IMG/VR virus record: IMGVR_UViG_3300020172_001601
Span: 1 to 64,000 of that record
Length of the DNA stretch: 64,000 nucleotides
Reading direction: 5' to 3' (one strand)
The notes under the pieces are model-generated. The model was not told the DNA's origin, did no database searches, and saw only the letters and a program-made list of their open reading frames with translations. This document shows positions 3,229 to 53,185 of this stretch, one piece after another (position 1 is the stretch's first letter; every line of letters begins with the position of its first letter). The position numbers and the translations under genes are program-made.

Positions 3229-3257
3229 TTTATTCAATCTTTGGCTTGGTCTATAAT
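3229..3257 (+). promoter_or_regulatory. Sigma70-like promoter TTTATT-N17-TATAAT
   Basis: Perfect TATAAT with 17-nt spacing, upstream of an AAGGAG RBS and the AAA ATPase. Confidence 0.6.
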
Positions 3258-3285
3258 CCCCTGACCTCGAACAAGGAGTTGTCAT

Positions 3286-17788: not shown

Positions 17789-18292
17789 ATGAAACCAAAA
17801 GCCGCACCCCTTGCGATAGTTCCCGTAGCCGATATTCCACAGGCGGTGGATGTCCCTGTCGATAATTTACTTCCTGTCTTTCGCACCATCACGCAGATGG
17901 AACAACTTTGCACAGCACAAGAAGGAATTGGCCTATCAGCGGTTCAGGTAGGCATTCCCTGGAAGTTATTTATCGTCCAAAGAGGCCACGGTTACGAATA
18001 TTACATCAACTGTGAGTATAATGGCATTGGTGAAAAACAAAAATCTATCGAAGGATGTTTATCTCTTCGAGACTCGCAGGGCAATTTGCGACGATTCGAG
18101 GTTGACCGATATTCCTCGATTGCCGTAAAGGGCAAGCAACTGAAAATATCATCCGACTCCCCTTCTTTGGTTTTGGATGATGTGGATCACATCGAACACG
18201 ATCTATATGCAGTTGTTTTTCAGCACGAGATAGATCACCACAATGATGTCCTTATCAGCGACATTGGCACCGAAGTCGAACTCACGAGGTAA
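17789..18292 (+). CDS. def: Peptide deformylase
   Basis: All three signature motifs: GIGLSAVQVG, EGCLS, QHEIDH. Confidence 0.95.
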   Translation: MKPKAAPLAIVPVADIPQAVDVPVDNLLPVFRTITQMEQLCTAQEGIGLSAVQVGIPWKLFIVQRGHGYEYYINCEYNGIGEKQKSIEGCLSLRDSQGNLRRFEVDRYSSIAVKGKQLKISSDSPSLVLDDVDHIEHDLYAVVFQHEIDHHNDVLISDIGTEVELTR

Positions 18293-19700: not shown

Positions 19701-19986
19701 TCTCAGTTTCCTAGCTCGACAATGGGAAACTGTTGAACTGCCCAAAGAGAAGAAGTATTTGCTCAGATACTTCAATACGCCGCTTCAAGCGGCCTTCTTA
19801 AAGTACGTCCACATCTTTGGAGATTACTCTAATTTCGTTGACCATACTGGCCTAGCAAGTAGCCCTCGATGGCTCGCAATCCTGTACAATAGATTGCAGA
19901 CATTGCAAACACTACACCGTGAAGCTAGGGCTAATATGGATATGACGGCCCTGGCTCACATTGAATCAGGGAATTACAAATTATGA
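19669..19986 (+). CDS. Hypothetical protein
   Basis: Fills the gap; ATGA-coupled to IDO; start uncertain. Confidence 0.6.
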   Translation: MRASILAQNRDLSFLARQWETVELPKEKKYLLRYFNTPLQAAFLKYVHIFGDYSNFVDHTGLASSPRWLAILYNRLQTLQTLHREARANMDMTALAHIESGNYKL

Positions 19987-21170
19987 GCATGTGGGATATT
20001 ACAGATCGTGGGTTTCTAGGCGTGGCCGATCCACTCGTTTCGCTCACGGCTAAAAACGAAAAGTATATTCCAGCCGCCGTTAGGTTGGAAAATATTGCTT
20101 CTGTTTTGCCGTATTGGATTGAAGAAAGATGTATACGAGAAGAACTCGTACACAACCTGCGTGAGATTGCCCCGTTGATTGATGGTGAGTTTTTACTGAA
20201 TCAAGATGAGGTAAAAACCGAACGGCTGATGCACCTGTATTCCTATATGGCCAGTGCTTATGTCTTCGCTAGACATGAGAATGCCGCCACGAGAATACCG
20301 TCAGAGATCGCTGTTCCACTTACTATGGTCGCTGAAAAGCTAGACCGCAAACCGATCCTTTCTTACGCTTCATATTGTTTAACCAATTGGGAGCGTATAG
20401 ACCCTAATGATGAAATCAAGTTGGGCAATATAAAATTGCTTACAAACTTTTCATCGCCAGAGTCGGGAAAATCAGATGAGGACTGGTTCATTCTGGTTCA
20501 TGTCGATATTGAAAATTGTGCTGCCGATGGTGTTGGTGCCTGTAAACAACTTTTGGAAAATCCCTGGAAGCAAGGCAACGAAGTTCACAATATTGTCACG
20601 GCCAACGATATTCTTACCAAGATTTTCGTCAGCTTGGCGAAGATGAATAAGACAATGGCAAAGATGCCAGATGAATGCAGTCCAGACAATTACTTCCGAT
20701 GGGTGAGGCCGTATATCTTCTCGTTCAATAACATGGTCTATAAAGGCTGTTTCCAAGATCAGCCAATTACCTGTCGAGGGGAAACCGGGGCGCAAAGTAG
20801 CATCATTCCTGCTTTTTTGGCGGCTCTCGAAATCAACCATCAGGATTCCATGCTGACGCATCACCTTATGGAGATGCGTGATTACATGCCAGCCCCTCAC
20901 CGACGATTTCTTTCAAATCTTGTGATCCAGACAGCGAATAATTCCGTTGTGGGGGTAGGTCTGCGAGATTTTGCTCGGCGTGACCCGGTGTTGAAGGACA
21001 TCTACAACGAGTGCGTCAATGAGATTATTGCCTTCCGAAACAAGCATTTCGAGTACGCAGTCAACTATATCTCCAAGAAGGTTGAAAATCCTTCCGGGAC
21101 GGGCGGTACGCCCTATGTCCCGTGGCTGAAACAACTTAGAGAAGAAACCGAGTCACACCTGATCCCGTAA
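19983..21170 (+). CDS. Indoleamine 2,3-dioxygenase family heme enzyme
   Basis: P.LSYASYCL.NW, DEDWFILVH, VRPYI, RGETGAQSS, MRDYMP..HRRFL, FRNKH (heme His), GTGGT. Confidence 0.92.
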   Translation: MSMWDITDRGFLGVADPLVSLTAKNEKYIPAAVRLENIASVLPYWIEERCIREELVHNLREIAPLIDGEFLLNQDEVKTERLMHLYSYMASAYVFARHENAATRIPSEIAVPLTMVAEKLDRKPILSYASYCLTNWERIDPNDEIKLGNIKLLTNFSSPESGKSDEDWFILVHVDIENCAADGVGACKQLLENPWKQGNEVHNIVTANDILTKIFVSLAKMNKTMAKMPDECSPDNYFRWVRPYIFSFNNMVYKGCFQDQPITCRGETGAQSSIIPAFLAALEINHQDSMLTHHLMEMRDYMPAPHRRFLSNLVIQTANNSVVGVGLRDFARRDPVLKDIYNECVNEIIAFRNKHFEYAVNYISKKVENPSGTGGTPYVPWLKQLREETESHLIP

Positions 21171-26207: not shown

Positions 26208-26226
26208 TGAATTAAGTGGTTTACAG

Positions 26227-26255
26227 AAAAGGACGGCGAGAGCCGTCCTTTTTTT
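26227..26255 (+). terminator. Intrinsic terminator
   Basis: aaaaggacggc-gaga-gccgtcc followed by T7. Confidence 0.9.
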
Positions 26256-27866: not shown

Positions 27867-28316
27867 ATGAATAAGGTACGCAGACGTTTCAAAGAAACGG
27901 TTAATCGAGATGATTACTGGATGGCGATGGCATTTATGCTGTCAGCCGGTTCCTCTTCTAATCGTCCACAAGGCTGCATAATCGTTGGCACGAACAATGA
28001 ACCACTGGCTATGGCCTGCGATGGCTCGCCCAGGTCCATGCAGGACAGCAGCCATGTGGTTCATGCCGAGATGAATGCAATATTCAATTGCAAAGGCCCC
28101 ATTCCTGGCGGCACAGCATATTTGACTCACACGCCCTGTTATCATTGCGCCCTGAGTTTAATCGGGGCAAATATCAAAAGAATAGTATATTTTCCCACCA
28201 AATCTATAGACCCAGACACTTTAGATGCTGTACGATGTGCATACGCTCAATCAGATGAGTTCAAGGGCAACCTGAACTGGATGAGGGACTATCTCAAGAC
28301 CCTCAACATATTTTGA
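27867..28316 (+). CDS. dCMP deaminase
   Basis: VVHAEMNAI and TPCYHCA zinc motifs. Confidence 0.88.
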   Translation: MNKVRRRFKETVNRDDYWMAMAFMLSAGSSSNRPQGCIIVGTNNEPLAMACDGSPRSMQDSSHVVHAEMNAIFNCKGPIPGGTAYLTHTPCYHCALSLIGANIKRIVYFPTKSIDPDTLDAVRCAYAQSDEFKGNLNWMRDYLKTLNIF

Positions 28317-28327
28317 TCGCCGAAACG

Positions 28328-28334
28328 ATAAATA
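28328..28334 (+). promoter_or_regulatory. Late-type promoter ATAAATA, 5 nt before ATG 28340
   Basis: ATAAATA-accgt-ATG. Confidence 0.6.
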
Positions 28335-28339
28335 ACCGT

Positions 28340-29125
28340 ATGACATGCACATCATCAGGAATCGGTTGCTCTCCTCAGCCACAGGGTTGCCCAGATCAGT
28401 TAGGCTGCGTTCCGGGCATTTGCCCGGACTTTACTCTTCGTAGACATGACACAAAGCCTGCATTCAAGGTGAAGATGGAGGATTGCGATGGTCCTATGGA
28501 CCTGACCGATCTGATATTGGAAGCTACGATGTGGGCCAAAGCCAAGCTCAAGAAGACGATCACGCCCAGCGACACATATTTTGCGTTAGCTGACAATATC
28601 GGCTTTAACCAAATAATGGTTGGCGATATAATTTTCATGGACCAAGCAAGACTTCCAGAAAAGATGCTGGTTATTGCTTTCGACGAAACCAACAGACTTA
28701 TTGAAGTCCAACGTGGGTATCACGGAACAAGTATTCAGACTTGGAAAAAAGGCACTCCGTTAAGAATTATGAAGTTTATCGGAGCAACAGCAGAAACGGA
28801 AATGTTGTACCAAGATATACTTGAAATGGATGGTACTACAACACCGAACGTCTTGATGGATAGTTTCTTCGTGTACGAATGGGGTCCGACAGATACCTGT
28901 CTTCCTGGTTGCTACTACTTAGAATTCAAACTTCTCAAATTACTCGATGTTGCCCCGATTATGCCGTTGGCAGACCCGATAGTGCCAAGTTTTACCGACC
29001 CAAGTTTGACGCCAGTGGATTTCGGCTGTGGTCTTGGGATCGGAGTTGAATGGGTTCGCCGCTTTCCGGTGGATAGCGAAGGATTCCTGATAAAGATCAC
29101 GGATTCACCAACAGCCGAAAACTAG
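28340..29125 (+). CDS. Putative virion structural protein (BppU-like N-terminal region, Cys-rich)
   Basis: FTLRRHDTKP...PMDLT...YEW...DT..PG.Y..EF...RFP pattern typical of baseplate upper-protein domains. Confidence 0.55.
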   Translation: MTCTSSGIGCSPQPQGCPDQLGCVPGICPDFTLRRHDTKPAFKVKMEDCDGPMDLTDLILEATMWAKAKLKKTITPSDTYFALADNIGFNQIMVGDIIFMDQARLPEKMLVIAFDETNRLIEVQRGYHGTSIQTWKKGTPLRIMKFIGATAETEMLYQDILEMDGTTTPNVLMDSFFVYEWGPTDTCLPGCYYLEFKLLKLLDVAPIMPLADPIVPSFTDPSLTPVDFGCGLGIGVEWVRRFPVDSEGFLIKITDSPTAEN

Positions 29126-29136
29126 GGAGAAGCCTA

Positions 29137-30768
29137 ATGCCATCAGTAGCCGAATTTTTGATCGAACGCCTGGAGAATGCCGGAGTTAAACATATCTTCG
29201 GTGTCCCAGGCGATTATGTTTTACAGTTTATTCAGCAGGTTTCTCAAACCGACAAGATTAAGTTCATCAATACGACTGACGAAAATCATGCCGGATTTGC
29301 AGCAGACGCATATGCGAGAATTCATGGCATTGGTTGCGTGTGTGCCACATATAACGTCGGAGCTTTGAAGCTCTGTAATTCAGTGGCCGGAGCATACGCT
29401 GAAAGATCGCCAGTATTGGTTATCAGTGGCTCGCCAGGACTGAAGGAAAGAAACGATGATTTTCTCCTTCATCATGTTGTCAAAGGGTTCGATAACCAGT
29501 TGAAAATATTCAATCATATAACCTGCCACAGTGTTATATTGGATGACGCCACGACAGCAGGTTGGAAAATCGACCAAGCTCTCGAAATGCTCAAGCACTA
29601 TAAGCAGCCGGTATATATCGAACTGCCTCGTGACGTAGCCGATCAGCCATTGAGATATGACGTATATCGTCAGGGGACTCCTGTGGAGCCGCCGAGCGAT
29701 GAAGAAAATCTCAAAGAAGCTCTGACTGAAATTTCCCAATGGATCAAAGATGCCAAGAATCCTGTCATTATGGCTGGAGTTCAGGTCGCTCGATTTGGAT
29801 TGGGCGGTGCGTTGGTTCGGTTTGCCGAGCGGCACAATATTCCAATGGTCACAACTTTATTGAGCAAATCAACAATCAATGAGCATCACCCATTGTTCGC
29901 CGGAGTATATTGTGGCAATCAAACGTCTGAGGAATCTCTACGAAAATTAGTGGACGATTCAGACTGCCTTCTGATATTCGGCGAAATGCTTACGGATATG
30001 ATGCTAGGGTTCCAATCCCCTAAATTTGCCAAGCGACAAACCGTATCTTGCTCTATTGAAGAGTTGAAGATTCGTAACCATTCTTATACGGACGTGCGGT
30101 TCTTGGATGTCTGCAATCATTTGTTCAAATCTGACTTGGGCAAGCGAGAGGCACCAAATATTCCTGTTCGTAAGAAGGCTGAATCATTTGTGCCTGTGGC
30201 TGACGCCAAGATCACCACAACTCGATTCTTTGAGAAGATCGACAGCATGTTGACCGACCAGATGGCGGTCGTGGCAGATATTGGCGAATGCTTATTTGGT
30301 GCTGCTGAACTCACTGTTTCACATCATCACTTTATCAGCCCCGCATTTTATTGTAGCATGGGTCCAGCCATCCCCGGAGCGTTGGGCTTGCAGATGGCGA
30401 AACCTCATTTGAGGCCAATTGTGCTGGTTGGTGACGGTGCATTCCAAATGTCTGTGACCGAACTGAGTACAATATTAGAACATAAATTGAACCCCATCGT
30501 ATTTGTCCTGAATAATCAGGGCTATACAACAGAAAGATTTCTGTTGGATGGAGACTTCAATAACATAAGAAATTGGGATTACCACAAAGTAACTGAAATG
30601 TTACGAGGCGGTCAGGGAGTTAAAGTAGAGACGGAAGACCAGCTTGAAGCTGCCATCGCTACTGCCTTGAAATGCACTACGTTGTTCGTAGTGAATGTCT
30701 CTGTTGATTCCAAAGACATAACTCCAGGTTTAAGGAGAATGGTTGAAAACCTTTCTAAGAGAGTCTAA
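29137..30768 (+). CDS. ThDP-dependent alpha-keto-acid decarboxylase (pyruvate/indolepyruvate decarboxylase family)
   Basis: FGVPGDY, E..AGFAADAYAR, LLHH, GDGAFQM...NNQGYTTER. Confidence 0.92.
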   Translation: MPSVAEFLIERLENAGVKHIFGVPGDYVLQFIQQVSQTDKIKFINTTDENHAGFAADAYARIHGIGCVCATYNVGALKLCNSVAGAYAERSPVLVISGSPGLKERNDDFLLHHVVKGFDNQLKIFNHITCHSVILDDATTAGWKIDQALEMLKHYKQPVYIELPRDVADQPLRYDVYRQGTPVEPPSDEENLKEALTEISQWIKDAKNPVIMAGVQVARFGLGGALVRFAERHNIPMVTTLLSKSTINEHHPLFAGVYCGNQTSEESLRKLVDDSDCLLIFGEMLTDMMLGFQSPKFAKRQTVSCSIEELKIRNHSYTDVRFLDVCNHLFKSDLGKREAPNIPVRKKAESFVPVADAKITTTRFFEKIDSMLTDQMAVVADIGECLFGAAELTVSHHHFISPAFYCSMGPAIPGALGLQMAKPHLRPIVLVGDGAFQMSVTELSTILEHKLNPIVFVLNNQGYTTERFLLDGDFNNIRNWDYHKVTEMLRGGQGVKVETEDQLEAAIATALKCTTLFVVNVSVDSKDITPGLRRMVENLSKRV

Positions 30769-31346
30769 TGATGAATAGCCCTAACTTCGGTAGGAAGTTC
30801 TATGGTGGTCGAGACGGTGGTAATCGTCGTAACGAAGATGAAAACCGTATCAATTGGCAGATTCGAGTCCCACAGGTTAGGGTCGTCAAAGATGAAGAAC
30901 AACTCGGCATAATGCCGACCGATGAGGCTCGCAGACTAGCTCAAGATGAGGGTCTGGACCTTGTTGAGATTGCTCCCCAGGCCCGTCCTCCGGTGTGCCG
31001 GATTATGGATTACGGACGGTTCAAATATGAGGAGAAGGCAAAGAAAAAGGAAAGCGCCAAGAAGCAGCGTGAGTCGCAAGTGCAATTGAAAGAATTGCGT
31101 TTGCGTCCCGGTATTGCCGAACACGACACCGATACCAAAATCAATCAGGCCAAAAAGTTCCTGGAAGAAGGTAGTCGTGTGCAGTTCACTTTGCAGTTTA
31201 GGGGACAACGAGAGATGTCTCATAAGGATCAAGGCTTTTCTGTCATGAAAAGAGTGACAGATGCTCTTGAACCCGTCTGCATCGTGGAGAAGGCACCCAA
31301 GCTAGAGGGAAACCGGATTATATGCTATTTAGCGCCCAAGGCTTAA
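30768..31346 (+). CDS. infC: Translation initiation factor IF-3
   Basis: RINWQIRVPQVRVV, GLDLVEIAPQARPPVCRIMDYGRFKYE, KELRLRPGIAEHD. Confidence 0.95.
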   Translation: MMNSPNFGRKFYGGRDGGNRRNEDENRINWQIRVPQVRVVKDEEQLGIMPTDEARRLAQDEGLDLVEIAPQARPPVCRIMDYGRFKYEEKAKKKESAKKQRESQVQLKELRLRPGIAEHDTDTKINQAKKFLEEGSRVQFTLQFRGQREMSHKDQGFSVMKRVTDALEPVCIVEKAPKLEGNRIICYLAPKA

Positions 31347-31357
31347 TGGAGCTTTAT

Positions 31358-32635
31358 ATGGCGAACGGGTTATCCGCTGAAAAAGTCCTGGAGCTACAAA
31401 ATGAATTCTTGCGGCGGCTGGCTCGTCATGAGCCACCGCCGAAGCATTGTGTTCCTTCATTGCTTTGTCGTGTCGTGGAATGCGATGATGCCCTCTTAGA
31501 GTTCACGCTCGGCAAGGTGGGCCAGAAGCTCCGTCTGTTCGCTCAAAATGTTGATTTCCAACACCCTGAGATTGTGTCCATATTTGATGGCGTCATTGCC
31601 AACGACCAGGACTTCGCTCAGGAGTGTATGGAGCTATTGGTCCTTGGGCAGTTTGCTAGAGATCACAATCTTCAAAGAATCATTCCAGCATTGGGTCGAG
31701 CATTAACTAAAGAATCGCTCACTCGGAATATCATTAAGAAGATTGACATTCCGGCCAATAATAGAATGCACGTTCGTCTCCTTAAAGACTGTAAGGAGAG
31801 AGAAGAAATACGCATGACCAAGCGTATGCAGACTATTGACCTTCAGTCCGTCTATAAAAAAGGCGAGGAAATCTGGAACGCCCAACCTGACAATTTTACT
31901 AAATTCCTACGCTTCGACACAGCGTATCAGGACGACCTCAAGGTGGCCGAGAAGAAGGCTCTGAGGTATGACGAACTTGGCTGCACATCGTTGGCTGCTG
32001 AAGTCCGCAAAAGCATTGAAGCATTCCGTGAGCATATGGAACAGTCCTATTACGGCTTCAATCGCATCACCATGACGAATGCGGCTGTCATCCTGGCGAA
32101 ATCATTAGGGTATACTTACACCCCTCCTCATGACGCCGGGGGTGCGTCCTACGGCACTTGGAGGACTGAAGGCAAAATCACCATCAACCGGAAGTTCTTC
32201 GGCAAATACAATTTCGATCCTGAGCAAACAATGGAGTTCTCTCCAATCGTTAGTTCTGTCGCTGGGTCGCCAATATTCACACAAAAAGTTCAAAGCCCAT
32301 ACAATTATGAACCTCGTGTATATCCTCTGCACGAATTCTCCGATATTGTAACCGATAATGTTCGCAAGACAGTATCGTTATTGGAGAAGTTCCCGGATGC
32401 GGGCGATAAGCCGATATTCGATCACTTTGGAGTGATCGTCCCTGGCGTAGCGTTCCCACTGGAAAAGCAAACGATGTATACGTTTTCGGACGAACGAGGT
32501 ATGGTGCAGTCTTATACGGCTCGTGAAGACGCACTGAAAACTCTGGATTCAATACTCATTAAAGGTGAGTATTTTCATCCCATCATTGTTGGTGAACGTG
32601 ATGGTAAGTGTTACTTCATTTGCTACTGGAACTAA
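31358..32635 (+). CDS. Hypothetical protein
   Basis: GGAG RBS before ATG 31358; about 425 aa. Confidence 0.75.
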   Translation: MANGLSAEKVLELQNEFLRRLARHEPPPKHCVPSLLCRVVECDDALLEFTLGKVGQKLRLFAQNVDFQHPEIVSIFDGVIANDQDFAQECMELLVLGQFARDHNLQRIIPALGRALTKESLTRNIIKKIDIPANNRMHVRLLKDCKEREEIRMTKRMQTIDLQSVYKKGEEIWNAQPDNFTKFLRFDTAYQDDLKVAEKKALRYDELGCTSLAAEVRKSIEAFREHMEQSYYGFNRITMTNAAVILAKSLGYTYTPPHDAGGASYGTWRTEGKITINRKFFGKYNFDPEQTMEFSPIVSSVAGSPIFTQKVQSPYNYEPRVYPLHEFSDIVTDNVRKTVSLLEKFPDAGDKPIFDHFGVIVPGVAFPLEKQTMYTFSDERGMVQSYTAREDALKTLDSILIKGEYFHPIIVGERDGKCYFICYWN

Positions 32636-32638
32636 ATT

Positions 32639-33010
32639 ATGGCTCTCAAACTGACTGACAAGGCCGTTGGCCAAATCAAAGAAATCATTGCATCTCAGAA
32701 TATGTCCTTGGACACCACCAATGTCCGAGTTGGCATCCGTGGAAAAAGCTGTTCTGGTCCCGTCTATGCTTTTGGGTTGGACGAAGAAACCGATCCTGAA
32801 CACGATGAATTGATCGTTCAGGATGGCGTCAAGATTGTCCACCACAAGCAGTTTGCCGACGACCTTAGTGGCGTCACTATTGACTTCAAAGAAGCTGATG
32901 ACAAGCGAGGATTTACTTTCAGTAATCCTCTTCAGGTTCTTGGTGGGTGCAGTAGCGGCGGGTGTGGAAGTGGTGGCGGCGGTTGTGGAAGTGGAGGATG
33001 CAGTGCGTAA
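32639..33010 (+). CDS. iscA: HesB/IscA-family Fe-S cluster carrier
   Basis: LKLTDKAV, RVGIRGKSCSG..Y, TIDF...GFTFSNP, C-terminal Cys/Gly tail. Confidence 0.85.
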   Translation: MALKLTDKAVGQIKEIIASQNMSLDTTNVRVGIRGKSCSGPVYAFGLDEETDPEHDELIVQDGVKIVHHKQFADDLSGVTIDFKEADDKRGFTFSNPLQVLGGCSSGGCGSGGGGCGSGGCSA

Positions 33011-33296
33011 TTTTTGGTTAGATCGCAAGAAGCCAGTCGATGCTGACACGACGCCTTTGTTGAAAGTCGGCGTTCGCCGACTCATGGTTTACATTGAGCG
33101 ACGAACTCATTACTTGTGGCAGGAAGATGCGTCTATGTACACATTTTCTTCCAAGGTCAAAGAGTTGTTAGACCAGCTACGTCGTCGTGGTGCTTTTTGT
33201 GATTACAACTTCATTTGTTCTGAAAAGACAATGGTGATCGGCATTCAGCCCAATGAAAGAGTTCCTTGGGTATATCTGGAACAGGAATTAGTATGA
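33003..33296 (+). CDS. Hypothetical protein
   Basis: GTG 33003 with GGAGG RBS; in frame with listed ORF 32823..33296. Confidence 0.6.
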   Translation: MRNFWLDRKKPVDADTTPLLKVGVRRLMVYIERRTHYLWQEDASMYTFSSKVKELLDQLRRRGAFCDYNFICSEKTMVIGIQPNERVPWVYLEQELV

Positions 33297-34780
33297 GTCA
33301 ATATGTTGGCATGAATTATATCGGCGGGTTTCTCCCATCCCGTGCCGATTTCGGCAGTTTCAATCCTGCCAATGAAGAACCCATCGGATATTTCCCTCAA
33401 TCGACTGATGCCGAAATTGATGAAGCCCTGGTCGCCGCTCAGAAGGCTTTTCCATCGTGGAAAGCTCTTAGCCGGGTCCAGAGGGCCGAATACTTCTGGC
33501 GTCTAGCGAAGCTGTTGGAAACCAAGGTGGATTATGTCGCTAAGGCCATCTCGCTTGAAACTGGCAAATCATTGAACGAGAGCAAAGCAGAAGTCATTGA
33601 GGCTTTGCATATGACTCAGTTCTGTTTTGGCAAGGGTCGTGAGCCGTCTGGCGACATTGTTGCTTCAGAGCTTCCAGAGCGGGACAGCTATGTGATCCGC
33701 AAGCCCAAGGGTGTTGTGGGCGTCATTGCTCCGTGGAACTTTCCATTCGCCATTGGTGGATTCTGGTGTTCTGGCCCATCTCTTCTGGAGGGCAACACCG
33801 TTGTCTTCAAGCCAAGCGAATTGACTCCAATGGTTGGACAGATCACAGCAGAACTCTTTCAAGACGCTGGCTTCCCACCGGGCGTCTTCAACTTATTACA
33901 CGGCGATGGCGACGTAGGTGCGAAGATCGTCAATGACGAACGAGTGGCACATATTGCTTTCACTGGCAGTGCTGAGGTTGGCCGATATATTCGCATTGCT
34001 TGTGCGAAGAGTTGGCACAAGACCTGTAGTTGTGAAATGGGCAGTAAGTCCGCAGTGATGGTCTTTGCCGATTGCGATTTCGATCTGGCAGTATCAGCCT
34101 GTGTTAACAGTGCGTTCAAGTTGAGTGGTCAGAGATGTGTATCGGCGGGCAGGCTGCTCGTTCAGCGATCAGTATTGGAAAAGTTCAAAGAACGGTTCTT
34201 GTATGAAGTCGGCACAGCGGTAGCCATTGATCCTTTTGATACGCCGCCCGGCGTTTGCTCTGTTGCGTTTGGTCCATTGATTAGCCAGGAGCAGATGAAT
34301 AGGGTTGCAGAGTTCAACGATCTCGTGCGATCAGACCCGGACGCCACAGTTTTATTTGACGGCGATAAAGATGGAAGGATGGATGGAAAGGGATATTTTT
34401 TGCGGCCATTCGTATATCAATCGGAATGGGCTGATAAGATGTATCTAAAACAAGAAGTATTTGGCCCGCATGTGGCAATTATTCCTTTCGATACCCTTGA
34501 AGATGCGATCAGAATATACAATGATACTGAGTACGGGTTGGCGTTGGGCGTTATTACCAACGACTTTCGTACTGCCAGAGAAGTAAGGAACCGATGTGAT
34601 TTCGGTTTAGGATATTGGAACGGCGGCAGCATTGCTGCCGAGAGCCATAATCCATTTGGTGGCGTGAAAAAGTCTGGTAATGGATGGCCTTCTGCTGCCG
34701 GTATGTTTGACGCAATCACGCACAAGGTAGCGTGGTCTGCGAATCACGGCGGGTTGAGCTTTCCACAAGGACTGAAGTAA
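33293..34780 (+). CDS. Aldehyde dehydrogenase
   Basis: IAPWNFP, KPSELTP, FTGS, EMGSKS, GQRC (catalytic Cys), QEVFGP, PFGGVKKSG. Confidence 0.95.
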   Translation: MSQYVGMNYIGGFLPSRADFGSFNPANEEPIGYFPQSTDAEIDEALVAAQKAFPSWKALSRVQRAEYFWRLAKLLETKVDYVAKAISLETGKSLNESKAEVIEALHMTQFCFGKGREPSGDIVASELPERDSYVIRKPKGVVGVIAPWNFPFAIGGFWCSGPSLLEGNTVVFKPSELTPMVGQITAELFQDAGFPPGVFNLLHGDGDVGAKIVNDERVAHIAFTGSAEVGRYIRIACAKSWHKTCSCEMGSKSAVMVFADCDFDLAVSACVNSAFKLSGQRCVSAGRLLVQRSVLEKFKERFLYEVGTAVAIDPFDTPPGVCSVAFGPLISQEQMNRVAEFNDLVRSDPDATVLFDGDKDGRMDGKGYFLRPFVYQSEWADKMYLKQEVFGPHVAIIPFDTLEDAIRIYNDTEYGLALGVITNDFRTAREVRNRCDFGLGYWNGGSIAAESHNPFGGVKKSGNGWPSAAGMFDAITHKVAWSANHGGLSFPQGLK

Positions 34781-35019
34781 TGATTGACATCAAGTATGGA
34801 ATTTTGGCGGTTGATTCTCGACAAGACGCAGAGGGCATGAATCCTATTCTTCATTTTTGTGGATATGAAGACCCGCCCAACGAAGATGATTTTGATGATT
34901 TGAGACATGAGTTATCTACAGACCAGGAGTTTGGCTTAACTGAAATGATGGATTATGTTGTTTTGGTTGAAGCGAGTTCTGAAGTTGTAGCCATGTATAG
35001 GGAAATGCTAAATGAATAA
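34780..35019 (+). CDS. Small acidic hypothetical protein
   Basis: TAATG-coupled start 34780. Confidence 0.65.
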   Translation: MIDIKYGILAVDSRQDAEGMNPILHFCGYEDPPNEDDFDDLRHELSTDQEFGLTEMMDYVVLVEASSEVVAMYREMLNE

Positions 35020-35860
35020 AATTGGAGTAGTCGGTGCCGGTATTGTGGGCAATGCCTTTTATGAAGGCATGAAGCACGCTTTCGATGTCATCAGATACGA
35101 CAGACGGCCAGAGTGTTCGGACGTAGACAGCCTACTCAAATTGGCCCACCGTCTCGACGGACCTGTTTTCGTGTGCGTTCCGACCCCGATGAACCCAGAC
35201 GGCAGTGCGAGTACGGCGATTGTCGAAAGTGTCCTAGCTGAGTTGGAGTATGCGTTTTCGTTGATGCCGGAGGCTAGTCGCATTGTAGTCATCAAGTCTA
35301 CCGTTCCACCGGGGACGTGCGACCGCTTGGGCGAGCAGTTCAAGTCCCTTCAGGTCGTATTTAATCCTGAGTTTTTGACTGAAGCCCAGCCAGTCGAAGA
35401 TTTCAAAAATCAGGATCGTATTATTGTGGGTGGTAAGTCAGAGGCTACACAGATTGTGGCCGACATTTACTCAGTTGCTTATCCTGGCGTTCCTCAATTC
35501 CAGTGTGACGCAACGACCGCAGAGATGGTCAAGTATGTCGGAAATTGCTTCTTAGCTACCAAAATTAGTTTTGCAAATGAAATTAGTCAAATTTGTGAAA
35601 AGTTAGGCGTGGCATATGATGGCGTAATCAATTTGGCAATGCTGGATAAACGCTTGGGACGATCTCATTGGAAGGTTCCAGGCCCAGATGGTCATTATGG
35701 ATTTGGGCTTACATGCTTTCCGAAGGACATTAACGCTCTGATTGCTGTCGCCATCGAATTGGGAGTTGACCCTAAGATTCTTCGAGCAGCTTGGGAGAAG
35801 AACTTAGAAGTTAGACCCGAAAAAGATTGGGAAAAGATGAAAGGCAGGGCTGTCTTATGA
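35012..35860 (+). CDS. UDP-glucose/GDP-mannose dehydrogenase family, short phage form
   Basis: GAGIVG, FVCVPTP, KSTVPPG, NPEFL, AEMVKY..N, GFGLTCFPKD; lacks the C-terminal UDP-binding domain. Confidence 0.9.
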   Translation: MNKIGVVGAGIVGNAFYEGMKHAFDVIRYDRRPECSDVDSLLKLAHRLDGPVFVCVPTPMNPDGSASTAIVESVLAELEYAFSLMPEASRIVVIKSTVPPGTCDRLGEQFKSLQVVFNPEFLTEAQPVEDFKNQDRIIVGGKSEATQIVADIYSVAYPGVPQFQCDATTAEMVKYVGNCFLATKISFANEISQICEKLGVAYDGVINLAMLDKRLGRSHWKVPGPDGHYGFGLTCFPKDINALIAVAIELGVDPKILRAAWEKNLEVRPEKDWEKMKGRAVL

Positions 35861-36267
35861 CGCACTATAAATTTAGTCAAGATGAATTGTTGGCATTTGC
35901 CAAGAAGATTTACGAGGAAGCCTGTTATGGATACATGGACCTCAAAGAATCGGTTTGTGATGTATTGGTTCGTGAATTTATTGATGGAAGACAAATAGTT
36001 TCACCAATTGACACTAACATAATGGCAGTGCCAGAAAATGTTGTTAGTGGCTATATGGGTCACGGCAATGCTTATACTGGTAGTGTTGTATCGTTTACGA
36101 CTACTAACACGGCGATGATCCCAGGCAATTTGAGCATGGGAAGCATCAGTGTAAACGACATACCCGCAAGTGGGCCAACTTGGGAAGTCAATGCTCCTCA
36201 AGTTCGCACAGAAGAGTATGTTCGACCAGAACAAAATTTCCACGGCAACGAATCCGAAAGGTTTTAA
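35857..36267 (+). CDS. Hypothetical protein
   Basis: ATGA-coupled start 35857. Confidence 0.65.
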   Translation: MTHYKFSQDELLAFAKKIYEEACYGYMDLKESVCDVLVREFIDGRQIVSPIDTNIMAVPENVVSGYMGHGNAYTGSVVSFTTTNTAMIPGNLSMGSISVNDIPASGPTWEVNAPQVRTEEYVRPEQNFHGNESERF

Positions 36268-36269
36268 CA

Positions 36270-36653
36270 ATGGCAAAGAGCAAGATTTTAGCCCCGTCAG
36301 GGCTTTCGATTTCCAGCACCACACCGATTATCGGTCAGCAGACTTTCACTCCTGTTCCAGAGATCACAGGCGTTAAGCCATGTGGTGCGCAGGTGTTGAT
36401 CGAGATGTTGACAGCACAGGAATTGGCAAATACGCCGATTACCATTTCCGAAAAGACGGACCTCAAGGTTCCGCTTCAGGGATATGTTCGAGCAGCAGGC
36501 CCATCCTTCAAGAGTGAGGATTGGGGTTTCAAGGTTGGCGACCGAGTGTTGATTTCAGGTGGTGGCGTTATTGCTCCCAACTATGATGATTCTCACCGTG
36601 ATCGCTTCTTCATGGAAGCACACGCTGTTAAGTGCGTGCTGAATGAGGAATGA
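36270..36653 (+). CDS. GroES-like co-chaperonin
   Basis: VKPCGAQVLIE...GYVRAAGP...FKVGDRVLIS; adjacent to dnaJ. Confidence 0.75.
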   Translation: MAKSKILAPSGLSISSTTPIIGQQTFTPVPEITGVKPCGAQVLIEMLTAQELANTPITISEKTDLKVPLQGYVRAAGPSFKSEDWGFKVGDRVLISGGGVIAPNYDDSHRDRFFMEAHAVKCVLNEE

Positions 36654-37732
36654 AAGACTACTACGAAGTCCTTGGTGTAGAGAGGGGCGCAACTGACGAA
36701 GAGATCAAGAAGGCGTATCGCAAGAGAGCCAGGACTCATCATCCCGATATGAATCCTGGCGATCCTGACGCCACTAAAAGATTTCAAGAAGTCCAAGAGG
36801 CATATGATACTTTAGGCGATCCGATAAAGAAGTCTAGGTATGATGGTGCCGCTCCGCACATGCGATTTCGTCGTAGGCCGCAAACAAAAACAAATCCTGG
36901 TACACCGCCACCAGGATTTGCTTTTGAAGAAGTCATGGAAGAGTTCTTCGGTGGTAGCACTTTCAAAGGCAGAAACATTACTGTCCGTTTGGAAGTAGAT
37001 TTTAAGGAGGTCTTGACTGGTTGCACGAAGCACATCAAGATCAAAAAGCGAAAACGATGTACAGGTTGTATGGGCAATGGGTTCACAGGTTTTCAACCGT
37101 GTCCTAATTGCGAAGGCAGCGGCGCTGTACAGGTTGCTGATTCCCCATTTGGGTTTCGCACTGCTTGTCAAGTTTGTAGTGGAACGGGCAAGGCGAGTGT
37201 AGTAAAGTGTGGGGACTGTATTGGCTCTGGGTATCTCCCAGGCTACCACGAAAAAGCTCTCGACATAAACATCCCTGCTGGTATCGACAACGGTATGCAG
37301 GTTCGGTTGGCCGGAGAAGGTGAGGAATCCCTTCGAGGCGGCAGGGCCGGAGATGTCATGGTCTTTGTTCTTGTTAAAGAACACCCTTTGTTCAGCAGAG
37401 AAGGGCCTCATTTATCTGTTGAAGTCCCTGTTTCCTATACACAACTGGTCCTTGGGGATGAGATTGAAATCCCTACTTTAGCCGAAGGCTCCTTGAAGGT
37501 CAAAGTTCCTGCTGGGAGTCAATCGCACACAAAGTTCCGTCTGAAGGGGAAAGGTTTTCCGGCTGGCAATGGCTCGCTGGGCGACCTAATAGCTACTTTG
37601 AAGATCGAAACGCCTAAATCTTTTGATGAAGACTACAAGCAGGCGTTAGAAAGGCTTTCTGAGCTAGAAAAGAAGAACATCACACCCCGACGAGAACAAT
37701 GGGCGAAAAAAGTCAGCGGCGAGGGTAAATAA
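36650..37732 (+). CDS. dnaJ: Chaperone DnaJ (class A)
   Basis: J-domain DYYEVLGV...HPD, four CxxCxGxG repeats, C-terminal domain IPAGIDNG. Confidence 0.95.
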   Translation: MKDYYEVLGVERGATDEEIKKAYRKRARTHHPDMNPGDPDATKRFQEVQEAYDTLGDPIKKSRYDGAAPHMRFRRRPQTKTNPGTPPPGFAFEEVMEEFFGGSTFKGRNITVRLEVDFKEVLTGCTKHIKIKKRKRCTGCMGNGFTGFQPCPNCEGSGAVQVADSPFGFRTACQVCSGTGKASVVKCGDCIGSGYLPGYHEKALDINIPAGIDNGMQVRLAGEGEESLRGGRAGDVMVFVLVKEHPLFSREGPHLSVEVPVSYTQLVLGDEIEIPTLAEGSLKVKVPAGSQSHTKFRLKGKGFPAGNGSLGDLIATLKIETPKSFDEDYKQALERLSELEKKNITPRREQWAKKVSGEGK

Positions 37733-39885: not shown

Positions 39886-40641
39886 ATGGCAAATTCAATT
39901 ACGCCGCACACGAACCAAGCGGTCCACAATCCCCTAGAGGGCGACAGGCCAGAACTGAGCGTCAAACTTCACGAGAATACCGACGAGCATGTTTCGATCA
40001 TCGTGGTTCACAAGGACAGACCTGAATACCTCAACATCTGTCTCCAGTCTATTGCAGTAGCTTCTTTTAACAACAACTATGAAATCATCGTTGTTGACAA
40101 CGGCTCTGGCAAGGAGTCTCAGGAGTTTCTGGACGAGATTGAAGGCGAAGTGAAGGTTGTTCGCAATGAGAAGAACTTGTATTGGTCAGCCGCAGCCAAC
40201 AAGGGCGTGCAAGCTGCTGACAAGAACAGCAAGTATTTTATTTTCATGCACTGTGACGTGGTTGTTCTCAACCCAGCGTGGATTGACTTGTTGATTAACG
40301 TCTCCGAGGCACAACAGTCTGGATTCGTTGGTATTGATACTCAGACCTACATGATGGGAAACCAGCGAGTTGACTTCTTGCAGGAATATGTCCTATTGAT
40401 TACTCGTGAAGCGTGGGACGATATTGGCCCTTGGCCAGAACAGTTGCCGCAGATCGGGCCATCTTTCATCATGACGTTAAAGGCTCAGAATCGTGGACAC
40501 AAGCCACAGATCATGAAGAATCAGATCATTCACCATTATCGCATTTTCAGTTTGGACATCAGCGAGTTTGAGCGAATGACTGAACAAGCTATGGTGACAT
40601 TGCCCAAGTTGATGAGCGACGTACAGTCGAGGCCACTATGA
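39886..40641 (+). CDS. GT2-family glycosyltransferase
   Basis: VSIIVV, YEIIVVDNGS, NLYWSAAANKG, FMHCDV. Confidence 0.85.
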   Translation: MANSITPHTNQAVHNPLEGDRPELSVKLHENTDEHVSIIVVHKDRPEYLNICLQSIAVASFNNNYEIIVVDNGSGKESQEFLDEIEGEVKVVRNEKNLYWSAAANKGVQAADKNSKYFIFMHCDVVVLNPAWIDLLINVSEAQQSGFVGIDTQTYMMGNQRVDFLQEYVLLITREAWDDIGPWPEQLPQIGPSFIMTLKAQNRGHKPQIMKNQIIHHYRIFSLDISEFERMTEQAMVTLPKLMSDVQSRPL

Positions 40642-41321
40642 AAGTAACTGCTAAGGATTCCAGTCTGGCTGTATTGGATGAAGTCTTTGAACAAGAGCGA
40701 TTTCAATACTTTTGGAACTACTTTAATGGTTTGGAATACGCTTATAAATCAAGCACTGCTTGGCATAAAGTGTGGCGAATCAATGACGGGCAGGTTTTAG
40801 CCAGTCTGTCTTCACATCATTCAAAGGCTCCTTTTAACAGCCCAATGGATTGGATTGACCAAGCCGTGACTGCTGTGGCAGGTCAGCTTGAAGATGTGGT
40901 CGGCAAGAAGGGCGAAGACTGGAACGACATCATTTATACGCCGTACATATATCCTGCCGGAACCAAGATTTCTTGGCATGATGACACTGGATATACTGGA
41001 GCGTGTATTTTTTACCCACACCAAGAGTGGAGTCCGCATTGGGGCGGCGAGCTTTATATCGCTAAAACACCGCCTCCAGAAGAGAGCAAACAGCTTGTTT
41101 TGAATAACGCCAAGGGATCAGTGGTAGACACGATGACTCGTGATTACGTTGCTCCTCTTTTGAACGCTTATGGAATGGGAACTTACATTGCTCCGTTGCC
41201 TAATCGCATGGTGTTCACTTCGGGAGCCGTGTGGCACGCTGTCAATCGTGTAGACGTAGCGGCGGGCGACAAGATGCGATGTTCTATCGTGGCTTTCTTT
41301 TTGCCTGAGAAGGTAAGCTAG
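40638..41321 (+). CDS. 2OG-Fe(II) oxygenase (prolyl-hydroxylase-like)
   Basis: WHDD (HxD), WGGEL, PNRMVF...WHAV...R.S. Confidence 0.88.
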   Translation: MKVTAKDSSLAVLDEVFEQERFQYFWNYFNGLEYAYKSSTAWHKVWRINDGQVLASLSSHHSKAPFNSPMDWIDQAVTAVAGQLEDVVGKKGEDWNDIIYTPYIYPAGTKISWHDDTGYTGACIFYPHQEWSPHWGGELYIAKTPPPEESKQLVLNNAKGSVVDTMTRDYVAPLLNAYGMGTYIAPLPNRMVFTSGAVWHAVNRVDVAAGDKMRCSIVAFFLPEKVS

Positions 41322-46911: not shown

Positions 46912-46947
46912 ATGCCGTAATATCCTGGATGGAGCTTGGAGAATCAC

Positions 46948-52886: not shown

Positions 52887-53185
52887 AATCATTAACAGAA
52901 TCAACATTTGATACAGATGTTACCGCCGATTCAAATTGGCTGGTTATGTTTTGGGCCGCTTGGTGTGGACCTTGTATTGACGTGAAATATCTCGAAGAAT
53001 TTGAAGTGGTCACTCCTGGCACCCTTGTTGGTCGGGTCAATGTTGAGGAAAACCCAGATTTAGCAGCCACTTACTCTATTGTTGCTGTCCCTACTTATGT
53101 CCTTTTTAAGCATGGACAGCCAGTCAAACGGTTGATCGGTTTGCAAACAAAAGAGTCGCTTCAAGAAGCTGTTAGATCACAATGA
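52883..53185 (+). CDS. trxA: Thioredoxin
   Basis: FWAAWCGPC, VNVEENP, VPT. Confidence 0.9.
   Translation: MKSLTESTFDTDVTADSNWLVMFWAAWCGPCIDVKYLEEFEVVTPGTLVGRVNVEENPDLAATYSIVAVPTYVLFKHGQPVKRLIGLQTKESLQEAVRSQ

What the first reader, a model, noticed from the sequence alone, without database searches (positions are those of the whole stretch)
29137..34780. Keto-acid decarboxylase plus ALDH (with IDO and a TrpF-like gene): possible phage Trp/indole-acetate pathway
Seen: an intact PDC/IPDC-family enzyme and an ALDH 2.5 kb apart in one gene run, with IDO and a TrpF-like barrel elsewhere in the window. Established: IPDC plus ALDH converts indole-3-pyruvate to IAA (auxin), and PDC plus ALDH is the PDH bypass to acetate and NAD(P)H. 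Substrates cannot be read from sequence. Inference: either aromatic-acid/auxin production or redox and acetyl supply.
Basis: partly seen in the sequence, partly recalled or inferred. Interest (0 to 1): 0.65.

Follow-up and report, generated by a model that had tools for sequence, protein, structure and literature searches.

The report
Huge-phage keto-acid decarboxylase plus ALDH
A freshwater huge phage carries an intact thiamine-dependent 2-oxo-acid decarboxylase and, 2.5 kb downstream, an NAD-type aldehyde dehydrogenase; both are real, strongly conserved auxiliary metabolic genes, but related phages gain, lose or inactivate them separately, and nothing found here ties them to tryptophan or auxin.

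Summary
The two ORFs are real. Window 29137-30768 encodes a 543-aa PDC/IPDC/KdcA-family ThDP decarboxylase with every catalytic and cofactor residue intact. Window 33266 (probably 33293)-34780 encodes an ALDH with Asn/Glu/Cys intact and an NAD+-type Glu. IDO (19983-21170) is also real. No TrpF was found in the 340-kb record.

The window is the start of a freshwater huge-phage genome, about 69% complete. The phage decarboxylases form one clade whose nearest cellular relatives, at 43-49% identity, are an uncharacterised Planctomycetota/Verrucomicrobiota-rich subfamily. This points to a single acquisition. All characterised enzymes (KdcA, PPDC, PDC, IPDC) are similarly distant, and both IPDC equivalog cut-offs are missed.

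Within the phage clade the decarboxylase is under strong purifying selection in this lineage (dN/dS about 0.02). It has been cleanly deleted at least 4-5 times and has lost its active site in four lineages. The ALDH is present in about half of the decarboxylase-bearing genomes. It is absent from one complete 572-kb genome, kept beside a dead decarboxylase, and once present without any decarboxylase.

No aminotransferase, acetyl-CoA synthetase or alcohol dehydrogenase is encoded.

Verdict: two separable accessory metabolic genes that may act in series (2-oxo acid to aldehyde to acid plus NADH). The Trp/auxin reading is not supported, and the substrate is undetermined.

The parts
29137..30768 (+). 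ThDP/Mg2+-dependent 2-oxo-acid decarboxylase of the PDC/IPDC/KdcA family, 543 aa. Catalytic residues D26, H112, H113 and E466 are present, as are the cofactor-activating E49 and the motif GDG(432-434)...NN(459-460). Residues at the substrate-pocket positions are M288, L386, T465 and probably M535.
   Evidence: Pfam N/M/C domains. NCBIfam best hit TIGR03394, 354 bits, below its 554.5 cut-off. PDB best hits KivD/KdcA at 1e-83, with residue-level alignment. Residues invariant in the family alignment A1. dN/dS 0.017 against the 94%-identical relative.
33266..34780 (+). Aldehyde dehydrogenase. The ORF runs from TTG 33266; the likely start is ATG 33293, giving 495 aa. It has Asn158 (PWNFP), general base Glu257 (CEMGS), nucleophile Cys291 (GQRC) and Glu185 (KPSELTP), which is the NAD+-preferring type.
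   Evidence: PF00171, 423 bits. No NCBIfam equivalog cut-off is reached. Motifs seen. Relatives are 490-502 aa long. dN/dS 0.051.
28313..29125 (+). Conserved all-beta protein ('u270') with a Cys-rich N-terminus. It ends 11 nt before the decarboxylase. It is the synteny anchor of the phage clade and is probably a structural protein, not an enzyme.
   Evidence: Present upstream of the decarboxylase in all 26 phage loci. Alignment A2. AF2 model pLDDT 80, with only weak matches, all to phage capsid, baseplate or tail proteins. Weak PHROG tail hit.
30768..31346 (+). Translation initiation factor IF3, immediately downstream of the decarboxylase. In relatives that lack the decarboxylase it directly follows u270.
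   Evidence: PF05198 and PF00707. TIGR00168, 193 bits, above cut-off. Synteny.
31322..32635 (+). Conserved protein of unknown function ('u437'), lying between IF3 and IscA.
   Evidence: No Pfam, NCBIfam or PHROG hit. No usable Atlas hit. Present in most related loci at 22-84% identity.
32639..33010 (+). IscA/HesB-type Fe-S cluster carrier.
   Evidence: PF01521. TIGR00049, 71 bits, above cut-off.
35012..35860 (+). Short UDP-glucose/GDP-mannose dehydrogenase-like protein, 282 aa. It lacks the first ~80 positions of the N-domain profile and the whole C-terminal UDP-binding domain. In several relatives it follows the ALDH.
   Evidence: PF03721 positions 80-183 and PF00984. A 289-aa orthologue abuts the ALDH in L005. 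The flanking small ORFs have no domain.
19983..21170 (+). Indoleamine 2,3-dioxygenase homologue, 8 kb upstream. Its distribution across relatives is independent of the other two genes.
   Evidence: PF01231, 208 bits. Aligns to human IDO1/IDO2, including the proximal His. Present in 2 of 5 large relatives.

Best explanation
The window encodes two separable auxiliary metabolic enzymes of a freshwater huge phage.

The first is an active ThDP/Mg2+-dependent 2-oxo-acid decarboxylase. It converts a host-supplied 2-oxo acid into CO2 and the corresponding aldehyde. This is shown at the level of family membership, intact catalytic residues and strong purifying selection. The reaction itself is inferred.

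The second is an NAD+-type aldehyde dehydrogenase that oxidises an aldehyde to its acid and yields NADH. Its fold and catalytic residues are shown. Its substrate is inferred.

In phages that carry both genes, as this one does, they may act in series as a CoA-, lipoate- and ferredoxin-independent oxidative decarboxylation. However, each gene also exists without the other, so host enzymes can evidently supply or consume the aldehyde.

The decarboxylase was acquired once by the ancestor of this phage clade from a bacterial subfamily of unknown substrate. It has since been inherited vertically, deleted several times and inactivated several times. This is the behaviour of a niche-dependent accessory gene.

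The substrate pocket (M288/L386/T465/M535) lacks the Tyr/Trp/Ile/Trp set that characterises the pyruvate decarboxylase of Zymomonas. A substrate larger than pyruvate is therefore possible, but the substrate is not determined. There is no specific link to tryptophan or auxin.
For: Family and active site:
- Domains are given.
- D26, E49, H112, H113, E466, GDG...NN and T465 are invariant in 24 family members. They align residue by residue with KivD/KdcA.
- The ALDH has its Asn, Glu and Cys in place.

Selection:
- dN/dS is 0.017 for the decarboxylase, the lowest in the block, and 0.051 for the ALDH.

Single acquisition:
- The phage decarboxylases form one clade (SH-aLRT 100).
- Their sister group is cellular and rich in Verrucomicrobiota and other PVC phyla, at 43-49% identity.

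Separability:
- The ALDH is in 13 of 26 decarboxylase-bearing records. It is absent from a complete 572-kb genome and lies about 46 kb away in a complete 511-kb genome.
- The ALDH is kept at 72% identity beside a catalytically dead decarboxylase in L016/L017.
- The ALDH occurs without any decarboxylase in L195.
- None of 80 cellular homologues has an ALDH within 6 kb or any conserved neighbour.

Accessory status:
- Of 54 loci anchored on u270, 31 have the decarboxylase and 23 have u270 directly followed by IF3.
- The backbone tree needs at least 5 changes for the decarboxylase and 9 for the ALDH.

Pocket positions:
- They are defined in PMC13003428, Table 2, and read.

No upstream or downstream pathway genes:
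-.
Against: - No biochemical or expression data exist. No RNA run holds the sequence.
- The raw counts do lean towards linkage. An ALDH is found in 14 of 31 loci with the decarboxylase and in 1 of 21 without it. In 12 of 13 ALDH-bearing records the ALDH sits 2-7 kb downstream of the decarboxylase. A functional pairing in this phage therefore cannot be dismissed. The phylogenetically independent contrasts (4-5 pairs) are too few to test it.
- Four lineages keep intact ORFs of 503-530 aa with destroyed active sites. This could mean the protein also has a non-catalytic role.
- The assignment of M535 as the equivalent of KdcA M538 was made by eye from a motif alignment.
Confidence: 0.6

Rival explanations
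1. An obligate two-step 'PDH bypass'. The decarboxylase is a pyruvate decarboxylase. The ALDH oxidises acetaldehyde to acetate plus NADH, and the host's acetyl-CoA synthetase then makes acetyl-CoA.
For: - Both genes lie in one co-directional run with no strong terminator between them.
- Both are under strong purifying selection.
- The ALDH has an NAD+-type Glu185.
- The ALDH is found mostly in genomes that also have the decarboxylase.
- Yeast PDC, which lacks the Trp392 equivalent, still prefers pyruvate (established knowledge). The pocket therefore does not exclude pyruvate.
Against: - The pocket lacks ZmPDC's Tyr290, Trp392, Ile472 and Trp551.
- Bacterial PDCs are the most distant of the solved relatives (about 1e-59 to 1e-65, against 1e-83 for KdcA).
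- The acetaldehyde dehydrogenase ExaC model scores 236 bits against a 900-bit cut-off.
- No acetyl-CoA synthetase (AMP-binding) gene is in the phage or in 4 relatives.
- A complete genome has the decarboxylase but no ALDH. The ALDH is retained beside a dead decarboxylase.
Confidence: 0.2
2. The decarboxylase is an indolepyruvate (or phenylpyruvate) decarboxylase, and the ALDH makes indole-3-acetate or phenylacetate. Together with IDO and TrpF, this would be a phage tryptophan module.
For: - The best NCBIfam model is the indolepyruvate/phenylpyruvate decarboxylase TIGR03394.
- JGI's automatic name for homologues is 'indolepyruvate decarboxylase'.
- The motif GECLF(383-387) resembles GDCLF in Azospirillum PPDC.
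- The pocket is not PDC-like.
- An IDO gene lies 8 kb upstream.
Against: - Both equivalog cut-offs are missed by a wide margin.
- IPDC structures rank below KdcA, PPDC and yeast PDC.
- The phenylacetaldehyde dehydrogenase StyD models score 273 and 246 bits against cut-offs of 850 and 800.
- There is no TrpF and no aminotransferase.
- IDO destroys the indole ring and is absent from 3 of 5 large relatives.
- The habitat is freshwater and sediment plankton, not plant tissue.
- Cellular homologues have no aromatic-pathway gene context.
Confidence: 0.06
3. The decarboxylase homologue has a mainly non-catalytic role, for example structural or regulatory, or as a ThDP or host-factor binder. On this reading the enzyme activity is incidental.
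For: - Four phage lineages keep intact ORFs of 503-530 aa at the same locus. These have lost D26, the HH pair, E466 or the GDG motif, and sit on long branches without stop codons.
- The gene sits between a putative structural protein and IF3, not among metabolic genes.
Against: - In the window's lineage and most others, every catalytic and cofactor residue is invariant, and dN/dS is 0.017.
- The gene is cleanly deleted in 23 of 54 anchored loci. Dead copies are therefore more simply read as stages of decay.
Confidence: 0.08

Closest known systems
Lactococcus lactis branched-chain 2-keto-acid decarboxylases KdcA/KivD (PDB 2vbf, 9msa, 6vgs)
   Same: They are the best solved relatives (E 1e-83). 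They share the three-domain architecture and the Asp26, His112, His113 and Glu462 equivalents, with almost the same numbering. A Met probably sits at the KdcA M538 position.
   Different: The alignment is long, but these hits score only a little above the other solved relatives. Pocket residues differ: S286->M288, F381->L386, V461->T465. The C-terminal region does not align beyond about residue 490. The phage enzyme belongs to a separate clade with PVC-type cellular relatives.
Azospirillum brasilense phenylpyruvate decarboxylase (PDB 2nxw) and Enterobacter cloacae indolepyruvate decarboxylase (PDB 1ovm)
   Same: Same family and fold (E 3e-74 and 1e-64). The GECLF motif resembles GDCLF of PPDC. 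The best NCBIfam model is the IPDC/PPDC equivalog.
   Different: Scores are far below both equivalog cut-offs. No aminotransferase or other aromatic-pathway gene context is present. Activity on aromatic substrates is untested.
Zymomonas mobilis pyruvate decarboxylase (PDB 1zpd) and the yeast PDH bypass (Pdc, Ald6, Acs)
   Same: The chemistry is the same as that proposed here: 2-oxo acid to aldehyde to acid plus NAD(P)H. The catalytic tetrad is the same.
   Different: Among the solved PDC-family enzymes it is one of the most distant (1e-59). The pocket residues Y290, W392, I472 and W551 are not conserved. No acetyl-CoA synthetase partner is encoded.
Uncharacterised 'alpha-keto-acid decarboxylase' subfamily of Planctomycetota, Verrucomicrobiota, Nitrospira, Nitrososphaerota and others
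   Same: These are the closest cellular relatives (43-49% identity). They share the signature L386, F387, T465 and E466 and all catalytic residues. They include the sister group of the phage clade.
   Different: In cells the gene stands alone, with no conserved neighbours and no ALDH nearby. No function is known for it, so it gives no substrate clue.
Huge-phage genome LR756511.1 (SR-VP_PHAGE_COMPLETE_CIR-CU-CL_42_23, 595 kb; Al-Shayeb et al. 2020, PMC7162821)
   Same: It has the same gene order, u192-u270-decarboxylase-IF3-u437-IscA...ALDH, at 28-55% protein identity. It is a published complete phage from vernal-pool mud.
   Different: The record is unannotated and lacks IDO. The paper's main text mentions neither a decarboxylase nor an aldehyde dehydrogenase.

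Membership tests
PDC/IPDC/KdcA family of ThDP-dependent 2-oxo-acid decarboxylases | Three-domain architecture: N-terminal PYR domain, central domain and C-terminal PP domain, in about 540-570 aa | tested here: met
   PF02776 (residues 3-116), PF00205 (197-322) and PF02775 (381-521) in 543 aa.
PDC/IPDC/KdcA family of ThDP-dependent 2-oxo-acid decarboxylases | ThDP/Mg2+ binding motif GDG...NN and the cofactor-activating Glu | tested here: met
   G432-D433-G434 ... N459-N460 and E49 are present. They are invariant in 24 family members.
PDC/IPDC/KdcA family of ThDP-dependent 2-oxo-acid decarboxylases | Catalytic Asp, His-His and Glu (KdcA D26, H112, H113, E462) | tested here: met
   D26, H112, H113 and E466 align with KivD/KdcA and are invariant in A1.
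PDC/IPDC/KdcA family of ThDP-dependent 2-oxo-acid decarboxylases | Decarboxylase activity on a 2-oxo acid | not testable with these tools
   Needs an enzyme assay.
Indolepyruvate decarboxylase (IpdC; NCBIfam equivalogs TIGR03393 and TIGR03394) | Score at or above the curated equivalog cut-off | tested here: not met
   TIGR03394: 353.9 bits against 554.5. TIGR03393: 289.6 bits against 946.
Indole-3-pyruvate route to IAA (aminotransferase, IPDC, aldehyde dehydrogenase) | A Trp aminotransferase that supplies indolepyruvate | tested here: not met
   PF00155 has no hit over its cut-off in the 340-kb record or in 4 large relatives, two of them complete. All 14 controls rang. A host enzyme could substitute.
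Indole-3-pyruvate route to IAA (aminotransferase, IPDC, aldehyde dehydrogenase) | Consistent co-occurrence of the decarboxylase and the ALDH | tested here: not met
   13 of 26 decarboxylase-bearing records have an ALDH. One complete genome has none. The ALDH occurs with a dead decarboxylase or with no decarboxylase at all.
Bacterial pyruvate decarboxylase (Zymomonas type) | Small pocket formed by Tyr290, Trp392, Ile472 and Trp551 | tested here: not met
   The equivalents are M288, L386, T465 and probably M535. The positions are taken from PMC13003428, Table 2.
Aldehyde dehydrogenase superfamily (PF00171) | Catalytic Cys, general-base Glu, oxyanion Asn and a Rossmann cofactor site | tested here: met
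   C291 (GQRC), E257 (CEMGS), N158 (PWNFP) and E185 in KPSELTP. PF00171 scores 423 bits.
Substrate-specific ALDH equivalogs (StyD phenylacetaldehyde DH, ExaC acetaldehyde DH, SSADH, BADH, GucD) | Score at or above the curated equivalog cut-off | tested here: not met
   The best is GucD at 320 bits against 770. BADH scores 309 against 669, SSADH 287 against 646, StyD 273 against 850 and ExaC 236 against 900.
Phosphoribosylanthranilate isomerase (TrpF, PF00697) | Presence of the domain anywhere in the window or genome | tested here: not met
   No hit at E<=0.01 in the six-frame search of 340 kb. Controls rang 14 of 14.
Indoleamine 2,3-dioxygenase (PF01231) | Domain score over the cut-off and a conserved proximal His | tested here: met
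   208 bits against a cut-off of 26. 'frnkHfey' aligns with 'LRSYHITM' of IDO2.

The most novel reading that the evidence does not exclude
The phage decarboxylase prefers aromatic 2-oxo acids. Together with the phage ALDH, it would make arylacetic acids (indole-3-acetate or phenylacetate) in infected freshwater bacteria. A virus would then be producing an auxin-type signal that could act on co-occurring algae or plants.

The evidence does not exclude this. The pocket is not PDC-like, the GECLF motif resembles that of PPDC, and the host could supply the aminotransferase.

A second unexcluded novelty is that the catalytically dead but intact copies in four lineages are pseudoenzymes with a new, non-catalytic role.
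Probability: 0.06. Interest if true: 0.75.

Novelty: new member of a known kind. Interest (0 to 1): 0.4.

Why it matters
Huge phages are known to carry translation and nucleotide-metabolism genes. A thiamine-dependent 2-oxo-acid decarboxylase was not mentioned in the huge-phage papers I could search. Yet homologues at 60-99% identity fill more than 100 protein clusters from freshwater and sediment metagenomes.

If the enzyme is active, these phages tap the host's central 2-oxo-acid pool without CoA, lipoate or ferredoxin. With the ALDH they also turn it into NADH and an organic acid.

The pattern of one ancient gain followed by many deletions and inactivations offers a natural experiment on when such an auxiliary gene pays off.

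The practical lesson is about annotation. The automatic label 'indolepyruvate decarboxylase' is a family label, not evidence for auxin synthesis.

Tried and rejected
- **TrpF.** Searched for with PF00697 in all six frames of the 340-kb record. Nothing found.
- **NCLDV capsid.** No hit, but the control was uninformative.
- **Pathway partners.** Class I/II aminotransferase, AMP-binding/acetyl-CoA synthetase and Zn-ADH are all absent from this record and from 4 large relatives.
- **Near-identical DNA in the phage collection.** None found.
- **Gene neighbourhood of 80 cellular homologues.** No ALDH within 6 kb and no conserved neighbour, so no functional clue.
- **'The decarboxylase is a core gene of the clade.'** I held this idea. 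That sample had been selected on the decarboxylase itself. An independent scan anchored on the upstream gene showed 23 of 54 loci without it, so I rejected the idea.
- **'u270 is an enzymatic partner.'** Rejected. It is all-beta, and its only weak fold matches are phage virion proteins. The Atlas gave no named family.
- **u437.** No family, and no Atlas hit.
- **Correlated evolution of the decarboxylase and the ALDH.** Only 4-5 independent contrasts exist, so the test is not significant in either direction.
- **Expression.** No RNA run holds the region. I did not use read laying, because contig-only DNA runs cannot show transcription.
- **Host.** The published relative has no host phylum call (82% of its genes unknown). 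I did not pursue host assignment further.
- **Other steps not taken.** I did not run complex prediction, because no binding claim is made. I did not use the large representative-protein search, because the word search and the family scans were sufficient.
- **Reference sequences.** Sequences of characterised reference enzymes were not available as ids. I therefore built no tree with KdcA, PPDC, IPDC or PDC. Their relative distances rest on phmmer scores.

Full report
**What is at the coordinates**

The interval 29137-34780 runs from the start codon of a 543-aa ORF to the stop codon of a 504-aa ORF, both on the + strand.

The first ORF carries the three domains of ThDP enzymes (PF02776, PF00205, PF02775). 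Its best NCBIfam model is the indolepyruvate/phenylpyruvate decarboxylase equivalog TIGR03394. However, it scores 354 bits against a cut-off of 554.5, and TIGR03393 scores 290 against 946.

Solved structures rank as follows:

| Enzyme | E-value |
|---|---|
| KivD/KdcA | 1e-83 |
| Ancestral PDC (ANC27) | 2e-76 |
| Azospirillum PPDC | 3e-74 |
| Yeast PDC | 2e-70 |
| An IPDC | 1e-68 |
| Enterobacter IPDC | 1e-64 |
| Zymomonas PDC | 4e-59 |

The protein is therefore roughly equidistant from every characterised specificity class.

The residue-level alignment shows D26, E49, H112, H113, E466 and GDG(432-434)...NN(459-460) all in place.

The second ORF is an ALDH (PF00171, 423 bits). It has N158, E257 and C291, plus an NAD+-type E185. 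No substrate-specific equivalog comes near its cut-off. Relatives are 490-502 aa long, so the true start is probably the ATG at 33293.

Between the two genes lie IF3, a conserved unknown protein and an IscA-type protein.

IDO at 19983-21170 is genuine. The 'TrpF-like barrel' could not be found anywhere in the 340-kb record.

**What genome this is**

- The window is the first 64 kb of a 340,341-bp IMG/VR virus record estimated to be 69% complete.
- About 80% of its ORFs are on one strand, and coding density is 87%.
- The window also encodes PhoH, a phage metallopeptidase, a sigma factor, DnaE, an NAD-dependent ligase, peptide deformylase, a GroES-like protein and DnaJ.
- A terminase-like ORF lies further along the record.
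- Near-identical DNA is found in freshwater and sediment metagenomes from 19 studies. None of these runs is RNA.

**Relatives of the decarboxylase**

A word search returned more than 120 protein clusters at 60-99% identity, many on contigs of 0.3-0.67 Mb. Two of these contigs, of 602 kb and 673 kb, show the same gene order: cytidine deaminase, u270, decarboxylase, IF3, the unknown protein, IscA, ALDH, then DnaJ. The 673-kb contig also has IDO upstream.

The published complete 595-kb huge phage LR756511.1 comes from vernal-pool mud (Al-Shayeb et al. 2020). It has the same order at 28-55% identity, but its record is unannotated. The paper's text mentions neither enzyme. I found no paper in the library describing such a gene in phages.

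The closest cellular homologues, at 43-49% identity, are in Planctomycetota, Verrucomicrobiota, Nitrospira, Nitrososphaerota and others. They keep all catalytic residues and share the signature L386/F387/T465. They have no conserved gene neighbours and no ALDH within 6 kb.

In a maximum-likelihood tree the phage proteins form one clade (SH-aLRT 100). A single 8-kb 'Armatimonadota MAG' contig nests inside that clade. The clade is sister to a Verrucomicrobiota-rich group. This fits one ancient acquisition.

**Is it functional here?**

Against the 94%-identical relative, the decarboxylase has the lowest dN/dS in the block, 0.017. The values for its neighbours are ALDH 0.051, u270 0.055 and IF3 0.11. 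Synonymous sites are near saturation, so these values are approximate.

All catalytic residues are invariant across 24 family members. I conclude that both proteins are functional enzymes in this lineage.

**Substrate**

The four positions known to shape specificity are KdcA S286/F381/V461/M538, which correspond to ZmPDC Y290/W392/I472/W551 (PMC13003428, Table 2). In the window protein they read M288/L386/T465 and probably M535 (assigned by eye).

This matches none of the reference signatures compared here (KdcA and ZmPDC). It lacks the bulky residues that characterise the Zymomonas pyruvate enzyme. Yeast PDC also lacks them and still prefers pyruvate; that point is from my own knowledge. The substrate cannot be read from the sequence.

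**Are the decarboxylase and the ALDH a pair?**

- Among 26 decarboxylase-bearing phage records, 13 have an ALDH.
- A complete 572-kb genome with terminal repeats has none. A complete 511-kb genome has one about 46 kb away.
- Four lineages have decarboxylase homologues with destroyed active sites:
  - L016/17: D26->P, H112->N, GDG->SED.
  - L023/44: D26 region changed, GDG->DEN.
  - L025/26: D26->R, the His-His stretch deleted, E466->K.
  - L055: the His-His stretch deleted, E466->N.
- One of these lineages, L016/17, still keeps an ALDH that is 72% identical to the window's.

My first sample had been selected on the decarboxylase itself. I therefore re-sampled using the upstream gene u270 as an independent anchor. 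Of 54 loci with enough downstream DNA, 31 have the decarboxylase. In the other 23, u270 is followed directly by IF3. These 23 include the 13-member subclade closest to the window and its 94% relative. One locus (L195) has the ALDH but no decarboxylase.

On a u270+IF3 backbone tree the decarboxylase needs at least 5 changes of state, 4 of them forced by well-supported branches. The ALDH needs 9. Only 4-5 phylogenetically independent contrasts exist. In them the ALDH tends to go the same way as the decarboxylase (1.7 against 0.2, with 2.1 unchanged), but this is not significant.

The raw counts are 14 of 31 against 1 of 21. They lean towards linkage but are inflated by shared ancestry.

IDO is present in only 2 of 5 large relatives. 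No aminotransferase, acetyl-CoA synthetase or Zn-ADH is encoded.

**The neighbours**

u270 ends 10-30 nt before the decarboxylase wherever both occur. It folds confidently (pLDDT 80) into an all-beta protein. Its only weak structural matches are phage capsid, baseplate and tail proteins. It is therefore not an enzymatic partner.

The block as a whole mixes translation and folding genes (peptide deformylase, IF3, a GroES-like protein, DnaJ) with scattered metabolic genes. It does not look like a pathway operon. There is a strong terminator-like hairpin at 26225-26254 and none of similar strength between there and DnaJ.

**Conclusion**

The best reading is two separable accessory metabolic genes, both ancestral to a clade of freshwater and sediment huge phages and repeatedly lost.

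- The decarboxylase is an active ThDP-dependent 2-oxo-acid decarboxylase of undetermined substrate.
- The ALDH is an NAD+-type aldehyde dehydrogenase.
- Where both are present they may act in series to give an acid plus NADH.

The steps that are shown are family membership, intact active sites, purifying selection, single origin and patchy distribution. The steps that are inferred are the reaction, the substrate and any coupling.

This is a new member of a known kind, a phage auxiliary metabolic gene from a well-known enzyme family. It is of moderate interest. Its main value is a cautionary one: the automatic label 'indolepyruvate decarboxylase' should not be read as evidence for auxin synthesis.

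Noticed in passing
L016/L017, L023/L044, L025/L026, L055 (decarboxylase ORFs starting at locus position 10001): Four phage lineages keep intact decarboxylase homologues of 503-530 aa whose catalytic Asp, His-His, Glu and/or GDG motif are replaced or deleted. All sit on long branches. They are either decaying genes or pseudoenzymes.
   Followed up: partly
window 35012-35860: A short UDP-glucose/GDP-mannose dehydrogenase-like protein (282 aa). It lacks the first ~80 positions of the N-domain profile and the whole C-terminal UDP-binding domain. A 289-aa orthologue overlaps the ALDH stop codon in a 673-kb relative (L005), and the gene follows the ALDH in several other relatives.
   Followed up: partly
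window 19983-21170: An indoleamine 2,3-dioxygenase homologue with a conserved proximal His, in a phage. It is present in only 2 of 5 large relatives and in none of the 14 control prokaryote genomes.
   Followed up: partly
window 4968-5840: A phage-encoded cation-channel homologue (Ion_trans 113 bits, Ion_trans_2 67 bits).
   Followed up: no
window 596-1966: A collagen triple-helix repeat protein (PF01391, 158 bits). A fused glycosyltransferase/methyltransferase follows at 1967-3190.
   Followed up: no
window 17789-18292, 30768-31346, 36180-36653, 36650-37732: A set of translation and folding genes spread through the same gene run: peptide deformylase, IF3, a weak GroES/Cpn10-like protein (23 bits) and a full-length DnaJ. 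IF3, the GroES-like protein and DnaJ recur in the related loci compared here.
   Followed up: partly
window 28313-29125 and alignment A2: The clade-wide protein u270 has a Cys-rich N-terminus (C..C..CPDF) and an invariant W-x-RRFP near the C-terminus. In some relatives (L005, L008, L010) it carries a variable insertion of up to about 150 residues. Its fold is all-beta, with only weak resemblance to virion proteins.
   Followed up: partly
L060 (JBEDDQ010000055.1, 8-kb contig of an 'Armatimonadota' MAG), 3056-4687: This decarboxylase has intact catalytic residues and nests inside the phage clade next to L010/L027, on a long branch. Its neighbours are not the phage ones. It is either a mis-binned or divergent phage fragment or a phage-to-bacterium transfer.
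   Followed up: no
L028-L050 (small IMG/VR contigs of 4-115 kb): A second, tight group of decarboxylase homologues, 33-36% identical to the window's, with all catalytic residues. They lie on small contigs classed as viral and share none of the huge-phage synteny. Some have a DnaJ-like gene about 7 kb upstream. Their origin is unclear.
   Followed up: no
window 26225-26254: A strong terminator-like hairpin (13-bp stem followed by a T run) just upstream of the gene run that contains the decarboxylase and the ALDH.
   Followed up: no
window 40638-41321, 46936-47949, 53182-54231: Further metabolic-looking genes: a 2OG-Fe(II) oxygenase, an amidoligase_2 protein and a GDP-mannose 4,6-dehydratase/epimerase-like protein, beside several family-2 glycosyltransferases.
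   Followed up: no
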